64,000 bases of DNA from Entomortierella parvispora E1425 (Eukaryota > Fungi > Mortierellomycota), in the NCBI GenBank assembly GCA_020891255.1, contig BQFW01000014.1, forward strand, positions 434,001 to 498,000, read 5' to 3'. The notes beneath the pieces were generated by a model. That model had not been told where the DNA came from. It did not search any database and was given only the letters and a program-made list of their open reading frames with translations. Each line of letters opens with the position of its first letter. Position 1 is the stretch's first letter. Position numbers and translations under genes: made by a program. Positions 18,553 through 39,753 of this stretch are shown in pieces.

Positions 18553-20025
18553 ATGCGTCCATCGTTCATCTCCACCCTCGGAGTCCTGTTGACCGTGTGC
18601 ACAGTCCTCCCGCAAACCGGGGCCCAGCAGTTGTGCAATGGATACGCCGAACTTTGCGCGAAACCATACAGCCAGGTCTCGTACGCCACCGCCCACAACG
18701 CGTATGCATTCGCGCCCCGCAACGGCATTGCCACCAACCAAGACAACAACATTCAGATTCAGCTGAAGGACGGCATTCGCGCATTCATGCTGGATGCGTA
18801 CAATGTACCTTCTGGCAACCCCAATGACATTGAGCTCTGCCATACCTCTTGTAAGGGCTCTTTGGTTCTTGCTTGAGCCTCGGTTTAATTGCTCATGCAG
18901 CTATTCTTTTTTCTTTCTTGGATCCTCTCTGATCTTTTTTCCTTGATTCACTTTAGGCAGTCTCCTGGACGGAGGACCCCTGTCAAAAACCCTCGCTTTG
19001 TTCAAGGCGTTTATGGACGCGAATCCGAACGAAGTCATTACGATCCTCTGGGAAAACGCACAAAACCTGACACCTACCCATTTCCAGGTAAAGAGAATCT
19101 ATCATTTTTGTGGACAGTGCATGTCCTCCGCGTCTTTGTCATGCATTATAACTGATCCTTCTTTTTCATTAATAGACCGTCTACAATGCATCTGGACTCG
19201 TACCTTATTCATACGCGCAAGCCAAGGGGAACACGACCTGGCCGACCTTGGCACAGATGATTGCTAGTGGCAAGAAACTGGTCAGCTATCTGGACACTGG
19301 CGCGGACGCCTCTGTGCCATGGTAATGGCATCTGGTGTTGTAACAGGCGTGTAAGGGGCCGACGGCTAAACGCAAGAATTCCTATGGTTTTACTAATGAC
19401 CCATATGCCTCCCCTTTCCTCCTCTTTCGACAGGCTGATGGCAGAGTACGACTTTATTTTCGAAACCCCCTGGAACCTTGTGAAAGGCGGTGGTTACCCG
19501 TGCACAGTGGATAGGCCCAAGGATCAGAGAAAACAGGTAACAGGCTCAAGTGCCAAGATTTTGTCGGTCGATCGAATGAAGAAAGTGGCATCTAATGACT
19601 CTTTCCCCTTGTAGATGTACGTCCTCAACCACTTCATCTATGGGGACTTCAAACTGGGCAACACAACTGTATCCATTCCTCAGAAGGGATCTGCAAACCA
19701 GACCAACGGACCCGATCTGACGTCCCACGTCAACTCGTGCGAAACGACGTTCAACCAGATCCCCAGCTTTGTGGCCGTGGACTTTTACGAGATTGGATTG
19801 TTGCTCCAGATGGTTGCCAAGGTGAACAATGTCACCTGGAATGGACAGTTGGCAACACAACCTCCACCTTTACCAGGAGCCACCGGACCTGGATCTGGAT
19901 CTGGATCTGGATCTGGAGGTGGATCGGGAACCTCTGGCAATGGAGCTGATGCGACCAGTATAAGTCTGGGTGCCCAGTTCTTCAGTGCCTTGGCCCTTGT
20001 CCTCTTGAGCTTGGTGGCCATCTAA
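18553..20025 (+). CDS. Secreted, probably GPI-anchored PLC-like phosphodiesterase (PI-PLC X-domain-like)
   Basis: Signal peptide; LCNGYAELCAKPYSQVSYATAHNAYAF, TNQDNNIQIQLKDGIRAFMLDAY, PNFV-type FVAVDFYEIG; Gly/Ser linker plus hydrophobic C-terminus; several introns. Confidence 0.88.
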
Positions 20026-21655
20026 AAAAAAAAGAGTTATATAAGTTTATGACTATATAGCTTTTCTCCACTCGAGTCAGCGACAGTTTGCACAGTTGCG
20101 AAATAGCGTAGGCAGACAAAAATACCCCGCAACCAATCTTTATAAATGAACGCGTAACCATGTGCACCTTTTATGGAGGCTACCCAGCCAAGAAGGTGGG
20201 CACTTTAGCTTTCTTTCCCCAGTCCTTTTACAAGGTAAGGGTACAAGGCGACAGGGTATTGTCGGGTTCGACAGGAGCTTTTTTCTGGGATGAGCAAAAG
20301 GGAAGTCCTTCCGATGAAAAGGGGCCGCACAAGGGTGTCGGACTTTGCTCGAGGGCTGCAATTGATTGGGTTGTTGACTTTAACCCATCATGCGCAAACT
20401 GGATCCCCGCGCCTTTGACGAGCATGAGTGGATCGCTCTCTCTGAGACAAAGCCCCCCACCGTGGCAATTGCTCAACAGAGGTACATGTACATGGGTTTT
20501 GATGAGGTGAGATGACGAAGTTCGACGGGACCTGGATACGCTACCGGCGGTAAACTCGAAATTAGTGCCAATATCATACTATGGAAGAGAACCGACAAGG
20601 AGGCTTTGCTTCATATTGAAGTTCAGACAAGGTGGCGCTGACGGTTCCTGGCTGCAGAAGATTGGCCTTTTGTTACAGTAACAACAAATATTCTCCGAAA
20701 GAAGGAACAAGGTGACCATGCAGAGGTGCGATAGCAGGGGGATTGATGATGGTCAGAGTGAGTGCTTCATTTAATTTTTTTTTTTTTTTTTGTGGATTGT
20801 TGTTGTAAAAAAAGGGCATTCGCCGCGAATAGGCTTGGGGCAACGGTCCAAGGAGAAAGGGCGAAGAGGATGACGGGTTTAGCCTCAATGACTCTTCTGA
20901 TTACATTCACATTGGGCAGACCAAAATAAAAGAAAAAAAAGATTTTGGCCGTTTTTTGACGTTGTGGCACAGACAGGCTGTTACTGCTGTGGCCGATCTC
21001 TCATTTGATGGCTGCTGGGGAAGCGTGGAAAAAGGCGCCGCGCTTTTAATCTTCTTTTCGACTGACATTCAGTCAGCGCTCCCGGATGCTGGCTGGGAGA
21101 GGGTGCGCTTGCAGCAAGAGCAGCAGGGAATCAATCAAGTCTAGAAGCGCCTGTTCCTTCCAGAACGGCATTCAAACAGAAAAAAAAATCTTCAATTGGC
21201 GAAAGAGGGTCAGTCAGACCGTGGTGATGCCCGCTGTACTTCTCTTCGGGTGAGTCGTGTGAGCGACTGCTGGACAGCTGCGACAGCGAAGGCCAGAAAG
21301 AAGAAAAGGCGAACTCGGGCACCCTTTTCGCCTCTCTCTTTCCTCTTCTCTTTTTCTTCGCACGCTCTGTCCCATCTCCACTTTCGGCCACCTCTCCTCC
21401 TTTTCGCTTCCCTCCCCTCTACTCACTGTTCTATACCCTACCTGTCTGTCCGCAGCATCCGTCACTCTCTCCTCCCACCACTCGCAAAATATCCCTGTTC
21501 TTGGGCTTGTCTCTTTCCCTCAATCCCCACTTTGACCGCCAACCTTCTTCTTTCTTTCTCCGACTCGATTTGTCGTCTATCGCATCTATCTCTATCCCAT
21601 TCTCAACCCAAACGTTTTGCCCATCACGGCTCGCCGACACAGTATCGCTCAAGAG

Positions 21656-23748
21656 ATGCAGAAAGAAGAGTTCACCTCGTTTGACGAAGGTGACAAGGTC
21701 GAGGTTTCTGCATACGACAAGCAGGAGGGATCAGCCTCATTGCACGATGATGCTGACCTTAGCACCGCTGCTCACGGCGAGGCTGGTCTGCAGCGTAACC
21801 TGCAGGCTCGCCACTTGACCATGATCTCCCTCGGTAAGGATCGAGCCCAACACACCTCTGCTCCCTTTTCAATCACTCTCTCTTCTCCCCACCGCTCCGA
21901 TTTACCCAGACCCAGTCATCCTACCACATTGCCCGCATCTGGATATACTACGGGCTTTTTTTTTTGCTTGGGAGCAAACAGATCTTCAAAACTGAACGAC
22001 AAATTGTTTGTTGTACGACAAACAAAACTGAGGCAAATTTTCTCACCCACCCTCCTCTTCCCTTTTGCGTCCAGGCGGCACCATTGGTACGGGTCTGTTC
22101 TTGGCCTCGGGCTCGAGTATTGCGATTGCAGGTCCTGGTTTCTCCCAGATTGCCTACTGCTTGATCGGAACCATGATCTACGCCATGATGTCCAGCTTGG
22201 GTGAAATGGCCACGTACCTGCCCATCACCGGATCCATCAACGCTTACGGTACCCGCTTCTTTGACCCAGCTCTCGGATTCACGCTCGGTAAGGTCCTTTC
22301 TAATATTTGTTGGGCCAACGGCAACATTTTTTCCACTGTTGCCTGAAACCTGAGGCATGAGCTTGCGATAGGTCCCTCGATCTGATCCACTAGCAGGGCA
22401 CTAGCACAGCCTTGGGCCAACCCCGTTGACGTCACGTGCTGATATTCTTTCTTTTCCTTATCTTTCCCCAGGCTGGGTTTACTGGTTCTCATGGTCCGTT
22501 ACTCTGGCGACCGAACTAGTGGCCTCCTCACTCATCATTTCGTACTGGATATCGATCGAAAGATGTCCCGGATGGGTCTGGGCCGTGGTCTTTATCACCG
22601 TCTTGACCTCTCTGAATCTCACGTCCGTCAAGGCCTATGGTGAGACCGAGTACTGGCTGTCGCTGATCAAGGTGCTAGCTGTCGTTGTCTTCATCATTGT
22701 TGGATTCCTGTACATTGGCGGCGCTGTTGGACACGTTCCCGAAGGATCGCCCAAGCCTGGTAGCCAAATCTTTGACATGGCACCCTTCAACGGCGGCTTT
22801 TCAGCACTGTTCTCCATCTTTTTGAACGCTGGATTCTCTTTCCAGGGTGCGGAATTGGTCGGTATCGCTGCTGGTGAGACCAAGAACCCTCGCAAGAACG
22901 TCCCCCGCGCCATTCGCCAGGTCTTTTGGCGTATCCTGGGTTTCTATGTGTTGACCATCCTCATCATTGGTATGACCATCCCCTACAATGATCCCGAGTT
23001 GGCCAACCCCCAAGGTGATGTGTTGTCCTCCCCTTTCACCCGTGTCTTTGTCCAGGCTGGTATCTCCATCGGAGGTGACATCATGAACGCTGTCATCTTG
23101 GTCGCCGTCTTGTCCGCTGGTAACTCGGGTCTCTATGCCTCCTCTCGTGCTTTGCATACGTTGTCCAAGGAAGGAAACGCGCCAAAGTTCCTGGGCTATG
23201 TGAACCGTTACGGTGTCCCCGTTTACTGCGTCCTTGCTACGTCCTTGGTTGGTTGCTTGGCCTTCATTGTGTCGCTGCCACAGATTGGTCAGGGTCAGGC
23301 CTATAACTGGCTCTTGGCCCTGGCCTCGACCACTGGATTCATTGCCTGGATCGGTATTGCTTTCTGCCACTTGCGATTCCGCATGGCCTACAAAGCCCAG
23401 GGTCGTTCCCTCAAGGATTTGCCCTTTGTGTCCAGACTTTATCCCTTTGGACCCGTCTATGTTCTCGTGGTGTGTTTGGTGATCTTGTTCGGACAGGGCT
23501 ACACGGCCTTCTCCCCCTTCAGCGTCAAGGCCTTCTTGTCCGCCTACGTGACGTTGCCCTTCATTGTGATCTTGTACGTTGGCAACAAGCTGTGGGCAAA
23601 GACAAAGATCTTGCGTTTGGTCGATGTGGATCTGGACACTGGCAGGAGCTTCCTTGACACGACCATGCCCGTAGGCAACGATATCGGCACTGAGGAACCC
23701 AAGGGAAAGGTCCACATGTTCCGCCGCGCTGTTGCCTCCATCTTCTAA
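21656..23748 (+). CDS. Amino-acid permease (APC superfamily, YAT/LysP-like)
   Basis: LQRNLQARHLTMISLG|GTIGTGLFLASG, YGETEYWLSLIKV, FSFQGAELVGIAAGETKNPRKNVPRAI, DVDLDTG; introns after SLG and FTLG. Confidence 0.95.
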
Positions 23749-25399
23749 ATGGCTCCAACGGCCAATGCCATATCTCTCTCTCATTCCTACATAGTATATT
23801 ACCCCATTAAAATTGTAACAAAACCCTCACTCACACACTCCTTGCTCTCTGAAATAGCCCTGACTGTAGCGTTTGTTGTGGGGGAAATAGCACCAGTATT
23901 TGCGGTCGAGGGGTCTGGGTCGCAAAAAAGCATTGATCGTGCTTCAAACAAACAAAAAAAACACGGAGTTGAAGCAACGTGTTAGCATCTGTTACTCTAG
24001 GACTCCTTTTTCTGGATGAACGACAGAGGAGCCCTGCTAGGTCCCAGAGGACTCACTTGTGGTTCCCGGCAAAACGGATTAGGGGGAACAGGCATGTTCA
24101 GGGTCCACGTTTAGCCCTGGAATGAAGAGGCCCAAATGTGGCAGTGTTGGCATGCAACGTGGTATTTTACCGAGGGACATGAGCTCGAGAGTACCAGGGT
24201 ACAATAGCACGATCAAAGTCGACCCTCTTGTTCATCCTTTGGTCGTGTGATGCACTTTTTCTGGCATTTCTGTTACTCCCCTTTGATGACAACGGCGTTC
24301 TCCTTCTCCTGTCTCTCTTCCTCTCTCTCTCCCCACAGCCTCAGCTGCTCTCAAGAGAACGAGCCTCCTGGAACAACAAGTGTATATGTGTGTTTTTGTT
24401 CTTCCTACGAGAATCAATAGGCAGTCATTTTTGTAACGCGGGTGGCAACCAAAAAAGAACCTCCTGTCCCTTTTCATGCTTTCCCTTCGTGCCTCCTACA
24501 AGTTATATCCCATGGTTGCTCAGACTCTGTCCCCACAGTGGCAGGCAATCCATGACTAACCATCGACAAAACCAGGTTTGGTCAAAAGTCTCCTGGATTG
24601 GCTCGAGTGTCATCGTATCTGGAGGGAGTTGGCTTTTTTGGCTATGTCCTATTTACCTTCCTTGTTACTGAGCCGGCAAATGTAAGAAGGGTCGAGCAAT
24701 GGGCCGAAGGATGGCGCGGGCTGGCTGATCGAAAAGAGGCCAACAAGGGACGACAGCGGCGGCGAGGGAGAATGAGAACGAGGATGTGCTATTGTTGAAG
24801 GCTCACTTATATTGATGGCTCTTCGGTTCCCAGTCTGGTTGACAGCTGAACTTGATGGCGTTCTTCTCCCCGGCTCCGACTCTTTTTTTTTTCCTCTTTT
24901 TTTTTTGGAACTGTAGGTAATCCCTTGCAATGTCCATGACCACCAATGGTTGTACCATTGGAGACACCAGTCCGACAAAAAAGAAAGAACGCTCAAGGGC
25001 TGAACCTTGCAATCATTTTTGTTTTCTATTCCCGACTTCTCTTTTTCTTCCACTCTTCCATCTTTTAATATCCATTTCTCTTTCTGTCTGTTCGTCGGTA
25101 CCCTTCCACAGCACGCAGTAGTCTCCAAATCCCCCATACTGAGGTATCCATAGTGCTGGCATCCCCTTTATTTCTCATCTTTCATACCTGCAGCTGGGCA
25201 GAGCTCCGCGTGCTCAACCCCTCTTGCTTTTGGATACCAACCATCCACTTTCGAATTCTATCTCCTTCCCCTCTCCTCCACCCCTCCTCCTCTCCTGCAC
25301 CTCTCAAACTCCTGTGCCTGATTTATTACTTATTTTTACATTGGGACGACGCCAGACCCAAGACGGACGCCCCATCCAGGTTATCAAAGGAACCCAAGA

Positions 25400-25406: not shown

Positions 25407-25636
25407 GAGACCTGGGATCTTCTTCATAAGGTCTTTTTTCTTTTTTCCGTGTAACCACCAACTGCAACCACTCTTTCTTTTACTTTTCGACTTGCTCATT
25501 CACGCTTCTGCACAGAGCACAAAAGAGTTCCATCCCTTTCCCCTTCAATCCCTTTCCCGCAGCTGCCGTTACACAAAAGAAAAAAAAAAGAAACCACTTT
25601 TCCCCTCAAAAAAAAAAAAAAAACTCATTGTTCACC

Positions 25637-26560
25637 ATGCTCTTTCCATCCTACGCCACTCTCCTGGTCGCGACATTGGCCATCCTCTCTTCGACTTCCT
25701 TCACACCTGCGGCCGAAGCGCACTCTTGGGCTGACTGCATCGACTGGCGCTTCAACAAGCCTGGGTCCAATGATTGGTCCAGCAAAGGTGGTGTGTGCCG
25801 TGGCTACGCCCGTCGATTCCCTCTCGGCAAAGCTTTTGGCTCCCTCGACTCTGCAGACCCCTCCCGTCATTACCAACAGGCCGGCAACCCCAACACGGCC
25901 TTGCCTTGCTCGGACCACAAGCATGGCAAAGATGTTGGATCGGATGAGACCAAGGCCAACCCTGTCAGCAAGGCCTATGGTGGCAAGTGGGGCGCCATGA
26001 CCACGACCCAGGTCGGTAACACGTTGTGTGTTCGTTGGCCCGCCAAGAACCACGCCGAGAAGAACGAGGACAACACAAAGGTTCAGATCAACTTCTCCAA
26101 GGTCAGGGATGGAAAGGATCCTAGCCAGCAAGATTTGTTGAAGAACACGGTGGCGTTGTTGCCCTACAAGAACTGCAACCCTGGCAAGGACTCTGACAAG
26201 AGACCTTGTGGTGGTTGCTTCAAGGTCCCTGTCCGCGCTGCCGGTACTTATCTGTTGCAGTGGCGCTGGATGTTGAACCCTGGCGAGTGGTATACCAGCT
26301 GTGCTGTAAGTATTATTTTGATTTGTTTGTTGCCTCGCTCTTCACAATGGATGCCTCCCGTCTTCAATGGAAGACTGACTCTCCTTCTCCTCTTCTTCTT
26401 CTCATAGGATATTCAAATTGGAACTGGTGGCAGTGGCAACAATGGCAGCGGCCCCAAGTCTACCAAGTCCACCAAGCCCACGAAGCCTACCAAGAGGACT
26501 GTTTGCAAAAAGGTCTACAAGAAGGGCAAGGTCGTCGGCAAGAAGTGCACCAAGCAGTAA
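25637..26560 (+). CDS. Secreted His1 protein, LPMO-like candidate, paralog 1 (exons 25637-26305, 26408-26560; 273 aa)
   Basis: Signal peptide ending AEA|H (His codon at 25721); WPAKNH; YLLQWRWMLNPGEWYTSCA|DIQI; Lys-rich C-terminal tail. The gene is secure; the function is inferred from motifs. Confidence 0.85.
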
Positions 26561-27736
26561 AGCTTTTCCATCCGCCATGTTCTAGACTCCTCATCATCAG
26601 TCACTGCACGTGTACTTTACTCTCCCCACTCCCTCTTGCACACACCATTACATTGTTTCCTGTCTGAAGACATGACCTATACATCAAAAAAGAAGAGACA
26701 CGGAAACGAGCTCTTCATTAAAGAACTACTCTCAAACACAAACACTGTCGCCTAGCAAAAAAAAGAGACCGGATTGGAGTGCGCGTTTTGGTCTACGAAA
26801 TGACCTTATTGACGGGCCTTTCGTCATCGGCGCAAGACTTTAGATTAGATCCAATCAACTTGTCCCCTGCATCCAACGACAAATAGTCCAAACAGCCAAA
26901 CATCCACACAGCCTGCCCACAGCGATAGTGACCCCGATCGAAAAAAATCGGAACTCTCTCCCTCCTTCCCAGCTCGTGCAGACAATGTTCCATCCATCAT
27001 TCCATGCATGCAATTTATTATTCGGTTTTGCGTTGATTGCTTCCTTGTGCCTGAGTGCCGATTTTTTTTGATGATTGAATCCCCGGGAGAGAAGGGCCTT
27101 TTTTTTTATTATCTGGGTGAGGAATTTCGGTTACTGTTGTTTGTTGTTGTTTGCACGGGATGAATGAACCCTATTGCAGTAGCTTCAAAGAGGGGTTCCT
27201 ATTTGCACTATCGAATTCTCTCTCCTGAAGCACGTCTCAATCTGCTTGAAGGTTTGATTGCCAATATGGCCTGGCGCGCAAGAGTGCTCCTCTCGGAGGA
27301 TGCGGCGCTGGAGCTCAACCCCAGAGCCAATGTGGAGGAAAGAACAAGAGAGCGAGGCATTTTGTGTCCTCGATCAGCGCACGCACACTGCATGATGCAT
27401 GGTCGTGCACCAGTTGGGCACCGCTGATCTGTCGACCATATTTTGTCCTACATTCGATCGCAGCAAAAAGAAAAAAAGAGTGTCGTTGCGTGCCTCTTTT
27501 TGTGAGCACTTTTTCTTTGTGGCCAAGAGATGTTGATGTGGATGTTGTCGACCTCTTCAGTGCACTGTTAGTCTCTTCCCGTCAATTGGACAGAGTTTGT
27601 ACTGGGCGTTTTACCTGGGACATGTCAACAAACAGCTCAAAAAATCCCGAGGGTGTCGCAAAAGCGAAAGAGTCATTGGATGCTCCCAAGCATATGCCAT
27701 TTTGCCACTAGCTTCTTGCCTCTACCTCTGATGTTA

Positions 27737-27753
27737 CCCCCCCCCCCCCCCCC
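27737..27753. repeat. Poly(C)17 tract
   Basis: Direct reading; unusual among the otherwise A/T homopolymers. Confidence 0.9.
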
Positions 27754-30103
27754 TATCAAAAGGCCCTGCCCACATTTTTCGCCCTCCTTCCTGAACGCCG
27801 CCTCGGCGTAGATCGAGGTCCTTGGCGAACGGAAAGAATAGACACTACTCCTTAGGAATACCCACAGAGGGTTCTATTTTTTGTTTTTTTTTGTAGTAGG
27901 TAGCTATATGTAGATCCCTTGGCAAGACCAGCAAGAAAGAGCATCCTTGAAGGAATTCTATCTTTTCAAGCTATATATAATCCAACTGGGCGCCAGGTTG
28001 CCGCTTTCCATCTAGTCTTGTACAGCGCAGAGCATGCGAGTTGGCGGTTGGACACCTCTTTCCTCTGCAGCCTGAAAGGCATGGCCACATCGTCTGGATA
28101 GGTATACCTGAGCCCGTTCTATCTCTTATTTTTGCTTTTCGACGCCGTGTGTCATTGAGAGCAAGAAGAGCAAGAGCAACGTAAAGAGCGACAAGAAAAA
28201 CCACTGCACTGCTGACTTGCTCTCACTTGACAACACTCTCCGAGAACTCTACAGGGCTTTTCTCTGTCAGCGAAAAGGGGGTGGGATGGGACGTGCTTGG
28301 GGGGATGTTGGGGCCTGCAATAAAGAGCTTTTGACCCCTACCCCAGAAGATGGACAACAACATCTAGGAGTGTCAATTGTGTGTGGTACCAGCCCACTTT
28401 TCACCCGGGAAAATTGTCCACAGGGACCCAAACCAAAAGGACAGAAACAAAGCCAGACGGTAAGACAATGCAAGGTCGATGGCAAAGCCGAGCACCACAT
28501 TGCACCACACCACAGCAAATCAGCCATGCCTCCTTTCTGTAAAACGAGGCTAAAACTCACAGCAGTTTTTCCAGCGTGGCGTGCCTAATCTCCTAGCGAG
28601 GGGCTTGACAGGGGGTAGGGGGCAGGAATAGGTGAAATTGCTGAGAAACAAACACCACAGCGACGGGACTTGCCGAATCTTAACGGTCCAGGGCACTCCA
28701 AATCGAGGAGACAAGGCCATCGGGGTCAGGGGGCGAGACAGGCTTGTCAAGTGCCCATCGCGATAGACTCACGCGGAGATGAAGCAATCCCGGGGAACAA
28801 CAGGTGAGAGAGAGAGAGGAGGGGAATGCCATTTCCCTCTTCCCTTGGTAAGACAGAATTCACCAGCAAAGTCCCTTGTGCCCTTGAGTGTGTTTCAATT
28901 TTGCTGTCCGTTCACTTACCACTTCGGTCCTCGAAAGAGTTGCTCGGTTCTCCCGATATACCACCCATTCCTCATAAACTCCTCAGGATCAAGTACCCTG
29001 CCCCCGAACCCCTGCCCCCTGTCTCTGACCTCTTCCTTGTCGGCAGCAAGACCCAAACAGCCCCGACGAGACAATTGCTGTGGGAGTTGCTTCCCAGTCT
29101 CTTCTGGCCAGGGTTCACTTGTTTTTCTTGAAGAGGTATAGGAGAATACACAAAGGCAAGGTTTGTCCAAGCCAAGAGATACGGTTGCTGTTGTGCCTTT
29201 TTGCTTGTGCCCAGAGGGCCGACCAGACGTCCAGAACATATTGCCGTAATTTAACAAAATAAAGTGCGGTCAAATGAGAGGAGTTTGGACTGCACGGTGG
29301 TCTGGAGGAAGGTACAATTTATTTTTTGCTTCCTTTTTTTGTCGTCACCACAGGAGGGGAGAAAGATAAGTGGCAGGATGGCGTCGCGCGATCCTATTTT
29401 GCGTTTAGTGCGCCTCTCCTGGCTGGAGGGCTGATGGCCGCTTGTTACTGCCACCACTACAGTTGAGCGAATGTCCGAGAAGGAAAAAAAAACTCTCAAG
29501 ACTTGATAGAGGCAAAGAGGGGGGGAGTGTAACCCACATTTTATTTCATTCCAACCTTCCTTCCTTGCTTTTAGACCACTTTCTCACCAATGCCAGTGCA
29601 GGACTCTTCCCAAAGGAGGGCGCAAACACACCCTCGGCATTTCGACAATTAGGATTAATTCAAACCCTGGCAAATGAGTTCAGGTGCGCGGGGAGTCAGA
29701 CAAAGATGTAAAAAAAAAATTGGGCTGGGTTAGTGAGCGTTGTTGCTTATGTATGTCCGTCCATTCGCGCTCCTCTTTTGGATTGGTGTTTTGGCCATTG
29801 AACCCGGTTCCCCTGCCCATTCAATCTTCATTCAATCCCAGGGGTTTCTCAAAACCGAGCATTGCGTTTGGAGAAAGTTGGTAGCCCCATAAATACCAGG
29901 GTATCTCCCCTCTTCTGCTTTTTTTTCTCTTTGTCAATCATCCACCTTCCATCTCTACCACCAACCTTTCCTGCTAAACCTAGCATCTCATCCTCCTCCC
30001 CTATCCCTTCAACGTACATCGACACTCTCGCATTCCAACACAACAATCCGACCTCCTCTCCTCCCTCATCTTCTAAACACCCACACACACACACTTCTTT
30101 AAA

Positions 30104-30814
30104 ATGGTTCTTAAGTCTACCTTCACTTTTGTCGCCGTTGCCGCTTTGGCTCTTTTCACCGCCGCCCCCCAGCAGGCTGATGCTCACTCTTGGGCTGACT
30201 GCATTGACTGGCAGTTCAAGAAGGGTGGCCTCAATGTCCCTGGCAAGCAGGGCCAGGACTGGACCGATGGTGCCGGAAAGTGCAACGGTTACGCCCGTCG
30301 CTACCCTCTCGGCAAGGCCTTCGGCTCCCTCGACTCTGCTGACCCCAACCGTCACTACCAGCAGGTCCACAAGAACCCCAACTCGGCCTTGCCTTGCTCT
30401 GACAAGAGGGCTGGTAAGGAGCCTGGTTCGGATGAGACCAGGGCTAACCCTGTCAGCAAGGCCTATGGTGGCAAGTGGGGCAAGATGACCGTCACCAACG
30501 TCGGTAACACCCTCTGCGTCCGCTGGCCTGCCAAGAACCACGCTGTCAAGGATGAGGAGAACCACAAGGTCCAGATCAACTTGTCCAAGGTCCGTAATGG
30601 CAAGGACATCTCCCAGCAGGAGTTGTTGAAGAACACCATTGCTCAGTTGCCCTTCAAGAACTGCAAGCCCGGCAAGAACGAGGATCGTCGTGCCTGCGGT
30701 GGATGCTTCAAGGTTCCCGTCCGTGCCTCCGGTGTCTACTTGCTCCAGTGGCGCTGGATGTTGAACAAGGACGAGTGGTACACTTCCTGCGCTGATATCC
30801 AGATCGGCAAGTAA
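30104..30814 (+). CDS. Secreted His1 protein, LPMO-like candidate, paralog 2 (intronless, 236 aa)
   Basis: Signal peptide ending ADA|H (His codon at 30185); HSWADC, WPAKNH, YLLQWRWMLNKDEWYTSCADIQIGK*; eight Cys aligned with paralog 1; strong codon bias. Confidence 0.9.
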   Translation: MVLKSTFTFVAVAALALFTAAPQQADAHSWADCIDWQFKKGGLNVPGKQGQDWTDGAGKCNGYARRYPLGKAFGSLDSADPNRHYQQVHKNPNSALPCSDKRAGKEPGSDETRANPVSKAYGGKWGKMTVTNVGNTLCVRWPAKNHAVKDEENHKVQINLSKVRNGKDISQQELLKNTIAQLPFKNCKPGKNEDRRACGGCFKVPVRASGVYLLQWRWMLNKDEWYTSCADIQIGK

Positions 30815-34409: not shown

Positions 34410-37317
34410 ATGAAGCTACTAGAGTCCAACAAGACTAATTCCAGTGAAGTCCCTACAATATCTATCGAGACCACCCAACCTCCCATACCGTCTGCGACCA
34501 CGATAATAGATCCCCCTCTAGAAACCATCGATATCCCCCAGGTCTCAGCTGCCTCATCTTCAAGTTCTCCCACAACATCCGCACCGTATACATGGGCGCC
34601 GGAACAGGGGTTCTTGGACAAAGCCAGCAGCAGCAACTCTTATCCTTCTGTTCATGTTTCCCCTTTTGCACATCCACTCGACGTGCAGACTTCCTCTGAA
34701 GAGATTCGTTCTTCGCGGAACGATCACAACAGTGGGGATGACTTCCTTCCTATGACCCCAGGAGAGGACATGGTATTCGATAGAGGACTTCTCTTCTCTA
34801 CCCACCGGATACCAACAGTTCGCTCCGATCCCAGCCATGCCGTTCATAGCTCTCCCCTTCCTACATTCCCTTCCATGAACAGGACTCATTCGGATCCAGA
34901 GGCGACGACTTTAAGGGTCGAGAACTCGACAGTCGTTGAAGGACGAGAAATTCACTCAACGCCCATTTACATGCCTCAGATCCAAGAGCCCTTGACAGCA
35001 GAAACCTTGTCCACTTACGCTTCCAGCACCCATTCATCAAAGTCATTGCAACACCCAATCATCCCACCGCCCCGAACGCCCTCACCCGCTGCCCAGAGTC
35101 AACAACAGCGTCTTTCCCCTCAAAATCAACCGCATCCACGAGTCATCAGTCCCAGTGCCTCGCACCAATCGCTTCATCATTTGTTAAGAAATGGCACCGG
35201 AGGTTCAGGAGCCAGCAGCAGCAACAACGGTGGTGGCTATTCATATACCCAACACTCTCTTCGACCTGATTCCGTGTGCTCATTTCCAGACAGTTCTCCT
35301 CTGATGGCCCCTAATGTATTAGCAGCGGTCAATGCCCGGCTACGGGAGTCGCATCGTCAGCAGGCTCAGGCTCAGTGTTCGTCTTCTTCGACTTTGACGC
35401 CTCGACCCATGCAAGAAACTATAGGCGGGAACAGCACAAGAGGTACTTCCAGGGCCTCGAGTATATTTGCTACCTCCCCGATGACCCACAGCACAATCCT
35501 AGAGCACTCGGGATCTATTATGAGTCGTGAGGACCTGTATGACTTCTTGAACCGAGAGGACGAGGAGGATGAGGAGGACGACCATCATCTGGGTCGACCC
35601 AAGCCTGGGTTTGCGTCCTCACTCGCAGGGGAGTCATCGCGCCGCAACTCAAACTCGACGTCAGATGGAAGCAGAATCGAATTGAACGCCAGGAATCGCA
35701 ACATTGATGGCAAAGTGCCTGCGCCAGCACCCGCACTAATGAGCAAGGGTTCGATCCACAGCTCCAAACAGACAGAGCTTAATTCGGGAGCCCTGGCCGC
35801 TCAAAGCAACATGAGGGAGGATCATTCTTCCGTAGACTCGTCAGGTTCCGCCATTTACGCCGAGAAAAGTAAATGGCTGCAGAAGAATGGCAGATCAACA
35901 CGGATGTGGCGGCGTACCTGTTGTGCAATTGGTGTGGTGATACTAGCGGCGACTATTGCTGGAATCACTCTGGGCTTTGTCTTGCGCAAGGGAAAGGTAG
36001 ACGGCCTTGCACCACCTCCGTAAGTATCCATTCCCCAAGACAGTCAAGCGCAAGTGCCTTGAAGTCCTACCATCCAAAACTCACGTCTTCATTTATTCAT
36101 CTCTTGTTTCGAAATAGCAATCCTAGCCAACCCGACGATCCACGAACACCGCTCATTACCAATTTCCCGCCCGATCCAAACCTGCACAAATCCTTCTACG
36201 GACTGGACTACAACCCAGCCAAATCTCTCATGCCTTGGTGCGGGATGCAACTCCAGGACGTGATCAACGACGTCAATTTGATTTCGCAACTCACGAACCG
36301 AATTCGCCTCTATGGCATGGATTGTGACCAGGCTGCCTTGACGTTCCAAGCCATCAACCTTCTCAAACTCAACGAAACCATGAAAGTTGTCTTGACGGTC
36401 TGGGTCGACCAGAACACGACAACCTATGAACGCCAGCGAGATACCCTTTACAAGGTCCTGGATACTTATGGAACCAGTATGGTCCAAGGCGTCAGTGTCG
36501 GCAATGAGGTCTTGTTCAGGAAAGACATGAACCTGACAGCTCTTTCAGCGCTGATGAAGGATGTAAGGACGACCATCCAAAGCCGATACAAGGTCAACAT
36601 CCCTGTCTTTACATCCGAGATTGGAAACAACCTCAATTCTGCTTTGGCGGCTGTTTCGGATGAGCTGGAGGGGAATTTGCATCCATACTTCTCAGGAACT
36701 GCCGTAGCGGATGCAGCAGCCTGGACGTTTCAGCAATATGACGACAAGATCACATCGAATCCGACGCCGTTAAAGTTGAAGGGAGCGATTTCTGAAGTGG
36801 GATGGCCCTCCGCACCAGCGTCGGCTGTTTATCGTAAGTCCTTTGTCAGTTTTGGTGACAGGGCCCAGCCTGATGGGCGGTGGTCCATCCAAGACTATTT
36901 TGCCTGCACTGTTGGAGAACTTGATGCTTGTCAGTTGACATTTTGCCTCTTGTCTCCCTGTTTTTCTCATTTGATTTAGCTGTGGCGTCTGTCCCTGGAC
37001 TTGCCAACATGCAAACCATGATCGATACTTTTATTTGCCAGGCCAACAACCAATCCATCCCTTGTAAGTATCTCAAAGAGGCGTCAAGCGCTAAAGTCTT
37101 CATCTCGCCTCAACAAGAAACGATGCTTGCGAAAGCAACTGTGGTTCAAAAAGGAGTTTTTCTCACGGATTGTTGCTCTGTTTATCTAGACTTCTGGTTC
37201 GAGTACAAGGATGAGCCTTGGAAAACAGACCCAACCGTTCCAGTAGAGCCGTTCTGGGGCCTCTTTGATAAGGATGGAAATCTCAAGGTGACGATACCAA
37301 ACTGTCCAGTATCTTGA
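34410..37317 (+). CDS. GH17 beta-1,3-glucanase/transglycosylase, type II membrane protein (BtgC-like)
   Basis: About 500-aa Ser/Pro-rich N-terminus, TM helix CCAIGVVILAATIAGITLGFVL, then SFYGLDYNP, RIRLYGMDC, VSVGNEVLF and ISEVGWPS (both catalytic Glu), FWGLFD; four exons. Confidence 0.92.
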
Positions 37318-38307: not shown

Positions 38308-38730
38308 CTAGTTCACCTTGGCCAGTTCAATGCTCAGGTTCGTCTGGGCACGCTGTTGGGCATTGTACTTGGGAAGACAGCAAATCAGAGCAAAGGGTCC
38401 ACAGCAGATGAACCAGGCGATATCGGAGCAGCCAATCTGGTTATCCTGAATCTCCTTCTGATACTGGGCAATAAGAGCGTCGTTACGCTGATAGGTCATG
38501 ACCGTAGGCTGCTGGGGCTGCTGGTTGTACTGAGGCTGTTGACCATTCGGGGCTTGCGGCTGCTGCTGGTAGTACTGATGCTGTGGAGAAGTCTGTTGTT
38601 GATTCATTGGAGGTGGGTACTGTTGATTGTACTGTTGCACCACAGTTGGCGGCGATTGCTGTCCATACTGCTGATAAGCAGGAGATGGAGCCTGAGGCTG
38701 GACCGTGTAGCTTTCTTCTGGCTTCTGCAT
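38308..38730 (-). CDS. Small Gln/Pro/Tyr-rich protein with a Cys-rich hydrophobic segment (CYSTM-like)
   Basis: MQKPEESYTVQPQ...IGCSDIAWFICCGPFALICCLPKY...; TC-rich leader upstream. Confidence 0.75.
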   Translation of the reverse strand: MQKPEESYTVQPQAPSPAYQQYGQQSPPTVVQQYNQQYPPPMNQQQTSPQHQYYQQQPQAPNGQQPQYNQQPQQPTVMTYQRNDALIAQYQKEIQDNQIGCSDIAWFICCGPFALICCLPKYNAQQRAQTNLSIELAKVN

Positions 38731-39753
38731 TGGACTTGGGGTAGAAGGGTAAAGTGATGAGTGATGATGAGGGAAAGAAGAGGGAAAGAGAAGGAACAAA
38801 GAAAGAGAGAGAAAAGAAGAGTCCCGCACGAACGGCCTCCCCTTTCTCTCTTCCCTGCGACCAAAGAAACAGTCAGAGTTTGGCATTGACAAACGCAAAT
38901 AGTTGATCTAAAGGGTAAACCACATTGGAGCTTTTTGAAGGCGGTTCCTGCGGTCGGTTCGCGTGCAGTAGGCTGAGACTTCAAGCTGGCCAGGTCCAAC
39001 GTCTGTGCGTTGGGATGCCTTCATTTTTGCGCCACAAGTAGTTCACCACCTTCGGGTGGTGAACGGTCCAGATAAGATCTGTGGCTCAAAATTGGGAAGA
39101 AAAAAAATATCCAGGGACAACCGAAGGTTTCCTGGTCATTTGTCTTGTCGCAAAGTCCATGGTCTATGAATGGGGACGACCCGGCTCTTGGTACAGATGT
39201 TCATATTACCTTATCTTGCAACAGTGCAGAAAAGATGTAGAGACCGAAAGTAGGCGCCCCGGGGAGCGTAGGTATTGGTACTTCATGTTTTAGGGCCGGT
39301 TGTTGAGAGTCGCCATTGCACAACGGGAATGAACAAGGAACCAAGGTTTTCCGTCTCGTGAAAACTGTGTAACTTCCTTCTGAATGAATGGCCTGCTCAT
39401 TATTACAAAAATATCAAGAATGCGTTCTGGTGTCCAGCTTGAGTCCATCTGAGGAGACCTTTTCACTAGGGCGACAGAGCAGTGGCAGATTCAATCGTTG
39501 CTTGTTGTCGTACATGTCATGTTGATAAACATCACTTCACAAGAAAATAATCGTTTCTGATATTGTTGCAGAGCCTTCCTGGCTCTCGCCCTTCCGCTGC
39601 TGCGTGCCAGCGTCCCCCGTCTTGCCGTTCTGCGCCATCCTCGGTCGTTTTCTGCTCAGCAACATGTTTTTTTTTTCTCTTTTTTCTTTTTTCTCTTCTT
39701 GCACGCCTCTTTTTTCCCCATTCATCCTCCCCTTCAGCGACAGTGAAGCAACC

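What the first reader, a model, noticed from the sequence alone, without database searches (positions are those of the whole stretch)
25637..30814. Tandem pair of secreted His1 proteins: candidate undescribed LPMO-like (histidine-brace copper) family
Seen: in both paralogs the predicted signal-peptidase site (AEA|H, ADA|H) leaves His as residue 1 (HSWADC). A second invariant His lies in LCVRWPAKNH after a beta-strand Trp; the C-terminus is GxYLLQWRW-x4-EWYTSCADI; eight Cys are aligned. Established: an N-terminal His, an internal His and an (E/Q)-x-(Y/F) strand followed by xxCADI/V are the signature of lytic polysaccharide monooxygenases (AA10, AA11, AA15, AA16, AA17). The N-terminal HSWxDC and the CxGYARR / PCSD / CGGCF segments match no AA family I can recall, and the host looks like an early-diverging fungus. 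Inference: a new or unclassified LPMO or copper-handling family, possibly acting on chitin or glucan; a GH17 gene lies 3.6 kb downstream.
Basis: partly seen in the sequence, partly recalled or inferred. Interest (0 to 1): 0.85.

Follow-up and report, generated by a model that had tools for sequence, protein, structure and literature searches.

The report
Tandem unclassified LPMO-fold copper proteins
Two neighbouring genes of a Mortierella-type soil fungus encode secreted proteins with the fold and copper-site residues of lytic polysaccharide monooxygenases, but they belong to a large, uncharacterised family that no curated LPMO family model reaches.

Summary
Gene A (25637-26305 + 26408-26560, 273 aa) and gene B (30104-30814, 236 aa) are 72% identical paralogues in a Mortierellomycota genome. 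Each has a 27-28 aa signal peptide ending A-x-A directly before HSWADC.

The AlphaFold model of mature B is confident (pLDDT 92.6). Its 50 best PDB matches and 30 best Swiss-Prot matches are all LPMOs, aligned from residue 1. They are only distant matches (Z 10-11.7, 8-20% identity) and equally far from AA10, AA15, AA13, AA11 and AA9.

Relatives form 464 clusters at 50% identity: Mortierellomycota, Amoebozoa, an ichthyosporean and marine protists. Among them His1, His119 and Tyr199 are invariant or nearly so.

No Pfam LPMO model hits the window proteins. The nearest curated family is the uncharacterised DUF7492, below threshold.

Three limits remain. Copper-site geometry could not be measured, CAZy/dbCAN could not be queried, and automatic names already call some members "chitin-binding type-4" or LPMO. 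The scan's first-stage readers flagged similar His1 proteins at two other loci of this genome.

The parts
25637..26305 (+). Gene A (A-type paralogue), exon 1: signal peptide (25637-25720), His1 codon 25721-25723, second brace His codon 26051-26053 (mature His111), Glu 26285-26287 and Tyr 26291-26293 of E-W-Y
   Evidence: orthologues P0044 (89%) and P0039
26306..26407 (+). Gene A intron, 102 nt, GTAAGT...CATAG, phase 0, between Ala and Asp of C-A|D-I
   Evidence: The spliced product restores CADIQIG as in gene B and all relatives. A contig of run X8 leaves the genome at 26311 and rejoins at 26497, which is compatible with splicing but not exact.
26408..26560 (+). Gene A exon 2: DIQIG, then a Gly/Lys-rich basic tail of about 45 aa with a C-x13-C pair, then stop TAA 26558-26560
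   Evidence: Similar tails occur in 24 of 46 A-clade proteins; P0039 has the same CxKVYKxGKxVGxKC element.
30104..30814 (+). Gene B (B-type paralogue), single exon, 236 aa: signal peptide 30104-30184, His1 30185-30187, His57 30353-30355 (conserved in Mortierellomycota only), His119 30539-30541, Glu197 30773-30775, Tyr199 30779-30781, stop 30812-30814
26561..30103 (.). 3.5-kb spacer between the paralogues. No convincing ORF. Not covered by run X8, whose contigs cover both genes.
34410..37317 (+). Downstream neighbour: Ser-rich N-terminus, one TM helix, GH17-like domain (about 36150-37305). Syntenic, and not shown to be functionally linked.

Best explanation
Genes A and B are an old tandem duplicate encoding secreted, disulfide-rich (4 S-S) proteins of about 210 aa with the LPMO beta-sandwich fold.

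Proposed mechanism: signal peptidase exposes His1. Its amino group and imidazole, together with His119 (after the strand LCVRWP), form a histidine brace that binds one copper. Tyr199 sits axially and Glu197 acts as the second-sphere residue, as in the E-x-Y of AA11. Once reduced, the copper uses H2O2 or O2 to oxidise and cleave a polysaccharide chain.

The likeliest substrate is chitin, or the fungus's own chitin/chitosan wall. The closest sequence relative (AA11) and the closest structural relatives (AA10, AA15) are chitin- or cellulose-active.

The family is a separate family-level lineage of the LPMO superfamily: a sister of Pfam DUF7492, remotely related to AA11, with a His1-to-His2 segment about twice as long. 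The two paralogues differ mainly in that A-type proteins carry a polycationic Gly/Lys tail, which may tether them to anionic wall or soil polymers.

Shown: gene models, secretion signal, fold, conservation pattern, remote homology and conserved tandem arrangement. Inferred: copper binding, catalysis, substrate and the role of the tail.

The confidence of 0.55 is for the catalytic copper LPMO reading as a whole. LPMO fold with a conserved brace is about 0.9, and chitin as the substrate about 0.35.
For: - Fold: AF2 pLDDT 92.6, pTM 0.90. All 50 top Foldseek PDB hits are LPMOs. VIA-align gives Z 10-11.7 with model residue 1 on chain residue 1 of AA15 5msz, AA13 4opb, AA11 4mah and AA9s. All 30 Swiss-Prot hits are LPMOs.
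- Conservation: H1, H119 and Y199 are invariant in 35 Mortierellomycota sequences. In a 36-sequence alignment reaching Amoebozoa, H119 is invariant and H1 and Y199 are at least 90% conserved, while H57 is not conserved.
- Motif register: the profile hits AA11 structures 9exj and 4mah at E = 2e-7 and 4e-7, with E-x-Y-x-x-C-A-D on R-E-M-Y-M-N-C-A-P. AA9 5ufv aligns in the same register (Q-F-Y-P-E-C-A-Q), though only at E = 0.33.
- Spacing: His2 to Tyr has a median of 80 residues, against 81 in the AA11 enzyme CWR-1 (His78, Tyr159; PMC9550227).
- Second sphere: Glu stands two residues before the Tyr in 164 of 193 motif occurrences.
- Secretion: the -3/-1 rule is met family-wide.
- Old duplication: A and B fall in separate clades (the A clade has 98% support), and A- and B-type genes are neighbours in at least 8 other genomes.
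- Expression hints: contigs of run X8 cover both genes at high depth but not the spacer, and soil metatranscriptome contigs match the 3' part of gene B.
Against: - No coordinates were available, so the His1-His119-Tyr199 geometry was not measured.
- The Ala two residues before His2, which I recall as conserved in AA10 and AA11, is Lys here (W-P-A-K-N-H).
- LPMO-fold proteins with an intact brace can lack polysaccharide activity (X325/Bim1; PMC13353379).
- The family occurs in phagotrophic amoebae and an ichthyosporean, which does not point to one obvious substrate.
- Run X8's library type is not on record, so the expression evidence is suggestive only.
Confidence: 0.55

Rival explanations
1. 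A non-catalytic LPMO-like copper protein, comparable to X325/Bim1. It binds copper through the brace for copper uptake, redox signalling or wall remodelling, but does not cleave polysaccharide.
For: Such families exist with an intact brace (review PMC13353379). An AA11 enzyme has a non-catalytic role in Neurospora (PMC9550227). The family is found in organisms that are not known polysaccharide degraders. One distant relative (P0184) ends in a GPI-like hydrophobic tail.
Against: The window proteins have no GPI signal: B ends 5 residues after the last strand, and A ends in a Lys-rich tail. There is no BIM1-like Pfam hit. The catalytic-type E-x-Y motif is strongly conserved. Genomes carry several copies in several clades, as is usual for degradative LPMOs.
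Confidence: 0.25
2. These are simply divergent members of CAZy family AA11, already counted as AA11 in dbCAN surveys of Mortierellomycotina, and so not a new family.
For: AA11 is the only characterised family with significant sequence similarity (E = 2e-7). AA11 is reported as enriched in Mortierellomycotina secretomes (PMC9391592). The His2-to-Tyr spacing is the same.
Against: The similarity covers only about 50 C-terminal residues. Single-sequence phmmer finds no AA11 chain even at E <= 10. The Mortierellomycota-only profile gives E = 0.02. The structural match to AA11 (Z 10.1, 133 residues aligned) is no better than to AA10, AA13 or AA15. His1 to His2 is 118 residues against about 58. CAZy/dbCAN could not be queried.
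Confidence: 0.12
3. A carbohydrate- or surface-binding protein that keeps the LPMO fold without a metal function. In this reading the conserved His residues are structural.
For: Fold alone shows no function. No metal data exist.
Against: His at mature position 1 directly after the cleavage site is conserved in 229 of 264 relatives across distant eukaryote lineages (Mortierellomycota, Amoebozoa, an ichthyosporean), together with His119 and Tyr199. That pattern is hard to explain without the brace.
Confidence: 0.05

Closest known systems
Pfam DUF7492 (PF24320), an uncharacterised fungal family, mainly Ascomycota
   Same: Both share all signature motifs: A|HSW-x-x-C-x-D-Y, W-P-A-K-N-H, C-x-G-C and W-x-W-x-F-N...Y-x-S-C-W/A-D. 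See the bona fide member P0182 (33.7 bits against a cut-off of 27). The Mortierellomycota-only profile hits P0182 at E = 4e-22. DUF7492 models are among the structural neighbours.
   Different: The window proteins get no DUF7492 hit at E <= 1. Their orthologues score 14-25 bits, below the cut-off, and only on the last 60 residues. DUF7492 itself has no known function, and no paper in the library mentions it.
AA11 lytic chitin monooxygenases (AoAA11 4mah/4mai, AfAA11B 9exj, 7p3u, N. crassa CWR-1)
   Same: Same fold. Both have His1. The E-x-Y-x-x-C-A motif is on the last strand in the same register (E = 2e-7). The His2-to-Tyr spacing is about 80. Both are fungal and secreted.
   Different: There is no detectable similarity in the N-terminal two thirds. 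His1 to His2 is 118 residues against about 58, with extra disulfides. Z is only 10.1 with 14-20% identity. I saw no extra C-terminal domain here of the X278 kind that I recall from many AA11 proteins; this is from memory and X278 itself was not searched for.
AA10 / AA15 LPMOs (Pfam LPMO_10: CBP21, CelS2, Tma12, TdAA15A)
   Same: These are the best structural matches: Z 10.7-11.7, 145-158 residues aligned from residue 1. UniRef automatic names call several members 'chitin-binding type-4 domain'.
   Different: There is no LPMO_10 hit for the window proteins. Identity is 9-17%. The family profile scores AA15 5msz at E = 3.3.
X325 / Bim1-like LPMO-like copper proteins (PF20238)
   Same: Both are secreted fungal proteins with a histidine brace and no established polysaccharide substrate.
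   Different: There is no Pfam hit and no GPI anchor. The E-x-Y motif is retained. Whether an Asp ligand is present could not be assessed.

Membership tests
LPMO superfamily (fold and active-site level) | Signal peptide cleaved so that His is residue 1 of the mature protein | tested here: met
   AEA|H and ADA|H follow hydrophobic cores. In relatives the -1 residue is A/G/S in 224 of 229 and the -3 residue is A/V/T/S/I/G in 227 of 229. No SignalP run and no protein data.
LPMO superfamily (fold and active-site level) | Immunoglobulin/fibronectin-like beta-sandwich that superposes on solved LPMOs from residue 1 | tested here: met
   pLDDT 92.6. All top 50 PDB hits are LPMOs. All 30 Swiss-Prot hits are LPMOs.
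LPMO superfamily (fold and active-site level) | A conserved second histidine completing the brace next to His1 | tested here: inconclusive
   His119 is invariant in the wide family, lies just after strand 109-115 and is 80 residues before the Tyr, as in AA11.
LPMO superfamily (fold and active-site level) | Axial Tyr/Phe in an (E/Q/N)-x-(Y/F) motif on the last core strand | tested here: met
   E197-W-Y199 aligns on E-M-Y of AA11 (significant, E = 2e-7) and, at E = 0.33, on Q-F-Y of AA9. Glu is present in 164 of 193 motifs.
LPMO superfamily (fold and active-site level) | Copper binding and oxidative cleavage of a polysaccharide | not testable with these tools
   Requires protein biochemistry.
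CAZy AA11 | Significant sequence similarity over the catalytic domain to AA11 members | tested here: not met
   Only about 50 C-terminal residues align. The single sequence finds no AA11 chain at E <= 10. CAZy/dbCAN models were not available.
CAZy AA11 | Structure closer to AA11 than to other LPMO families | tested here: not met
   Z is 10.1 (133 residues aligned) for 4mah, against 11.7 for AA10, 10.7 for AA15 and 10.6 for AA13.
Pfam LPMO_10 (AA10/AA15/AA16-type) and Pfam AA9 | Score at or above the Pfam gathering threshold | tested here: not met
   No hit at E <= 1 for either window protein. Only two distant relatives reach E of about 0.008 for LPMO_10. P0184 is sub-threshold for both models.
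Pfam DUF7492 | Score at or above 27 bits | tested here: not met
   The window proteins get no hit and their orthologues score 14-25 bits. Homology to true members is nevertheless clear (P0182 at E = 4e-22; shared motifs).
X325 / BIM1-like | BIM1-like domain hit and a GPI anchor | tested here: not met
   No Pfam hit. The C-termini are hydrophilic.

The most novel reading that the evidence does not exclude
This is a new auxiliary-activity family of copper monooxygenases. It is shared by Mortierellomycota, Amoebozoa, ichthyosporeans and marine protists, and together with DUF7492 it forms a clade separate from AA9-AA17. Its enlarged, disulfide-stapled substrate face (His1 to His2 of about 118 residues) would act on a substrate or in a role not yet covered by LPMOs, for example chitosan or mixed zygomycete walls, or prey and self cell walls in phagotrophs. 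In this reading the A-type Lys-rich tail serves as a new kind of polyanion-binding anchor in place of a CBM.
Probability: 0.3. Interest if true: 0.75.

Novelty: new variant of a known kind. Interest (0 to 1): 0.6.

Why it matters
Earlier LPMO families were added one by one to CAZy (AA9-AA11, AA13-AA17). From what I recall, each brought new substrates or new biology, such as xylan-coated cellulose, insect chitin remodelling and pectin in plant infection.

This family is large: 464 clusters at 50% identity, with several copies per Mortierellaceae genome. It sits in abundant soil fungi linked to chitin turnover and in amoebae. It has no curated classification, no structure and no assay.

If it is catalytic, it would add an enzyme class for chitin or chitosan, or for cell-wall oxidation in early-diverging fungi and protists. 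If it is not, it would be another test case that a histidine brace does not imply polysaccharide cleavage.

The conserved A/B pair, with and without a polycationic tail, offers a natural experiment on substrate targeting.

Tried and rejected
- Pfam on both window proteins returned only noise (Peptidase_M14, ERF).
- phmmer of gene B against PDB sequences found nothing.
- Literature searches found no paper on this family: DUF7492; AA18; LPMO with Mortierella, Mucoromycota, Mortierellomycota or Amoebozoa; histidine brace with Dictyostelium or AlphaFold. AA18 is grouped with the LPMO families in PMC13431639; I take it to be the CelOCE family of Santos et al. 2025, which is my inference and not stated in the passages read.
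- The putative 'LPMO16' family of Voshol et al. (PMC6950343) might overlap DUF7492 or X325. No sequence was available to test this.
- The supplement of PMC9391592, wanted for AA11 counts per genome, is not held.
- An RNA-run search with the whole 5.4-kb stretch listed nothing. With gene B alone, only relatives and runs of unrecorded library type were listed. The read layout therefore gives hints only, not a clean splice junction.
- His57 (RHYQQ) was considered as the second brace residue and rejected, because it is not conserved outside Mortierellomycota.
- The GH17 neighbour was considered as a substrate clue and set aside, because the permease and PI-PLC genes upstream are equally syntenic.
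- Model coordinates are not exposed, so no distances were measured.


Full report
**Observation**

The window carries two same-strand genes 3.5 kb apart.

Gene A starts at ATG 25637. Its reading frame runs to ...EWYTSCA at 26305 and is interrupted by a 102-nt intron (GTAAGT...CATAG, 26306-26407). It resumes with DIQIG and a Gly/Lys-rich tail up to TAA at 26558-26560, giving 273 aa.

Gene B is a single ORF, 30104-30814, of 236 aa. The two products are 72% identical over 227 aligned residues.

The only slip is that the spacer between WRW and EWY is five residues, not four.

**Host and family**

Word-indexed HMMER found 223 relatives. All of the best 120 that carry a name are from Mortierellomycota (the nearest is Entomortierella parvispora at 84%), usually with several per genome.

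In an alignment of 35 of them, H1, H57, H119, Y199, E197 and eight Cys are invariant. An exhaustive profile search of 1.84 billion cluster representatives gave 464 clusters at E <= 0.001 and 214 at E <= 1e-10. Named examples are dictyostelids (Heterostelium, Cavenderia) and the amoebae Paradermamoeba, Phalansterium and Gocevia. Others are the ichthyosporean Chromosphaera and MMETSP, Tara and other metagenome sequences.

In a 36-sequence alignment spanning these, H119 is invariant and H1, Y199 and six Cys are at least 90% conserved. H57 is not conserved.

Among 264 Met-started relatives, 229 have H-x-[WYF]-x-x-C after a median 26-residue presequence. Small residues occupy positions -1 and -3 in all but a few of them. 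His as mature residue 1 is therefore a family property, not a coincidence of two sequences.

**Fold**

AlphaFold2 on mature gene B with the 35-sequence alignment gave pLDDT 92.6 and pTM 0.90, an all-beta sandwich.

- Foldseek against the PDB: 48 hits at E <= 0.001, and every one of the top 50 is an LPMO (AA10, AA9, AA13, AA16) or a related copper protein (PmoD).
- VIA-align: Z 10-11.7 for AA10, 10.7 for AA15 (5msz), 10.6 for AA13, 10.1 for AA11 and 8.7-9.7 for AA9. In each case model residue 1 lies on chain residue 1 where the chain is numbered from His1.
- Swiss-Prot models: all 30 best hits are LPMOs, none closer than TM 0.51.
- AFDB clusters: the nearest is a Dictyostelium purpureum protein (TM 0.72, 27% identity), followed by unnamed, 'chitin-binding type-4' and DUF7492 entries.

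The fold is therefore an LPMO fold, roughly equidistant from all solved families.

**Sequence relationship to known families**

Pfam finds nothing for the window proteins. Orthologues and distant relatives give sub-threshold hits to DUF7492, mostly on the last 60 residues.

A metagenomic relative, P0182, is a true DUF7492 member (33.7 bits). It shares every signature motif and is hit by the Mortierellomycota-only profile at E = 4e-22. The family is thus a divergent sister of DUF7492, which itself has no known function and no literature in the library.

Against PDB sequences, the Mortierellomycota profile touches AA11 at E = 0.02. The wide-family profile reaches E = 2e-7 and 4e-7 for AfAA11B and AoAA11, but only over the last beta-hairpin. 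In that alignment E-x-Y-x-x-C-A-D lies on R-E-M-Y-M-N-C-A-P.

By the chain numbering printed, that Tyr is residue 140 of 4mah. This agrees with Tyr159 (precursor numbering) of the AA11 enzyme CWR-1, whose brace histidines are His20 and His78 (PMC9550227). The His2-to-Tyr distance is 81 there and has a median of 80 in this family. His1 to His2 is 58 there and 118 here, with a family median of 111. The extra length lies in the loop region between His1 and the His119 strand; that this region shapes the substrate face is my inference from what I recall of other LPMOs.

**Paralogue history and context**

A FastTree of 118 Mortierellomycota proteins rooted on amoebozoan members places gene B in a clade of 36 and gene A in a clade of 56 with 98% support.

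In at least eight other genomes one member of each clade carries adjacent locus tags. Fetched loci confirm the same-strand order A then B in Entomortierella, Lobosporangium, Podila, M. alpina, Gryganskiella and Lunasporangiospora. The duplication therefore predates the radiation of Mortierellaceae.

A-type proteins often carry a basic Gly/Lys tail (24 of 46 have more than 12 residues after the last strand). B-type proteins end five residues after the last strand (32 of 33).

The neighbourhood PI-PLC_X, amino-acid permease, A, B, GH17 is syntenic as a block, so the GH17 gene is weak evidence about substrate. M. alpina has an additional CE4 deacetylase gene between B and GH17, which is at least compatible with a cell-wall theme.

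**Expression**

No RNA run of the organism could be listed.

Contigs of run X8 (same species label, library type not recorded, about 90% identity) cover both coding regions at high depth and none of the spacer. Run X7 of the same sample covers parts of the spacer. This looks like transcript data. One X8 contig leaves the genome at 26311 and rejoins at 26497, which is compatible with the intron plus a divergent tail but is not an exact junction.

Soil metatranscriptome contigs match the 3' part of gene B at 85-100% identity.

**Interpretation**

The best-supported reading is a copper-dependent LPMO-type protein. The parts of the proposed copper site are:

- His1 and His119: the brace.
- Tyr199: the axial residue.
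- Glu197: the second sphere.

The family is not reached by the Pfam or PDB sequence models of any characterised LPMO family.

Substrate is inferred only. Chitin, or the chitin/chitosan wall, is favoured because AA11, AA10 and AA15 are the nearest relatives. From my own knowledge, Mortierella species are also associated with chitin-rich soils; the paper read on that topic (PMC8208141) lists Mortierella only among taxa correlated with disease suppression.

The main rival is a non-catalytic copper protein of the X325 type. A smaller possibility is that CAZy/dbCAN already absorbs these proteins into AA11, since AA11 is reported as enriched in Mortierellomycotina secretomes (PMC9391592). The purely local similarity makes that unlikely, but I could not run dbCAN.

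**Novelty**

No paper in the searched library describes this family.

It is not wholly unseen. UniRef and ESM-Atlas automatic names call several members 'chitin-binding type-4 domain-containing protein' or 'lytic polysaccharide monooxygenase'. Pfam has catalogued the sister group as a DUF. First-stage readers of this scan flagged two further 'secreted His1' loci elsewhere in this genome, which I did not examine.

I rate it a new family-level variant of a known kind of enzyme. It is worth biochemical follow-up.

Noticed in passing
window 18620-23750 and 34410-37317; L004, L005, L002: The gene order PI-PLC_X, amino-acid permease, LPMO-like A, LPMO-like B, TM+GH17 is conserved across Mortierellaceae genera. 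In M. alpina a CE4 (Polysacc_deac_1) gene sits between B and GH17 (L005 12182-13771). In Entomortierella parvispora (L001) the stretch downstream of B showed no strong match to the window's GH17 gene.
   Followed up: partly
window 26408-26560; P0039, P0031, P0035, P0046 and others: A-type paralogues carry Gly/Lys-rich polycationic tails. Gene A and P0039 share a CxKVYKxGKxVGxKC loop. A few A-clade members instead have poly-Asp/Glu tails (P0060, P0061). Their function is unknown.
   Followed up: partly
P0184, P0169, members of alignment A2: Distant protist relatives carry extra parts. P0184 has a GPI-like hydrophobic C-terminus, the Heterostelium protein P0169 has a C-terminal extension of about 200 aa, and others are fused to TSP1, EGF or WW domains.
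   Followed up: no
window 26561-30103: This is an unusually long 3.5-kb spacer between the paralogues. It has no convincing ORF and no coverage in the transcript-like run X8. Long A-runs lie just upstream of gene A's ATG (25575-25625).
   Followed up: no
window 38308-38898 (-): ORF of 196 aa with a Gln/Pro-rich N-terminal half and a Cys-rich, hydrophobic C-terminal segment (WFICCGPFALICC). It has no Pfam hit.
   Followed up: no
same genome, other pieces (earlier notes s1-192339, s1-183358): First-stage readers flagged two more 'secreted His1, unclassified LPMO' genes elsewhere in this genome. This agrees with several copies per genome, but I did not compare them with A and B.
   Followed up: no
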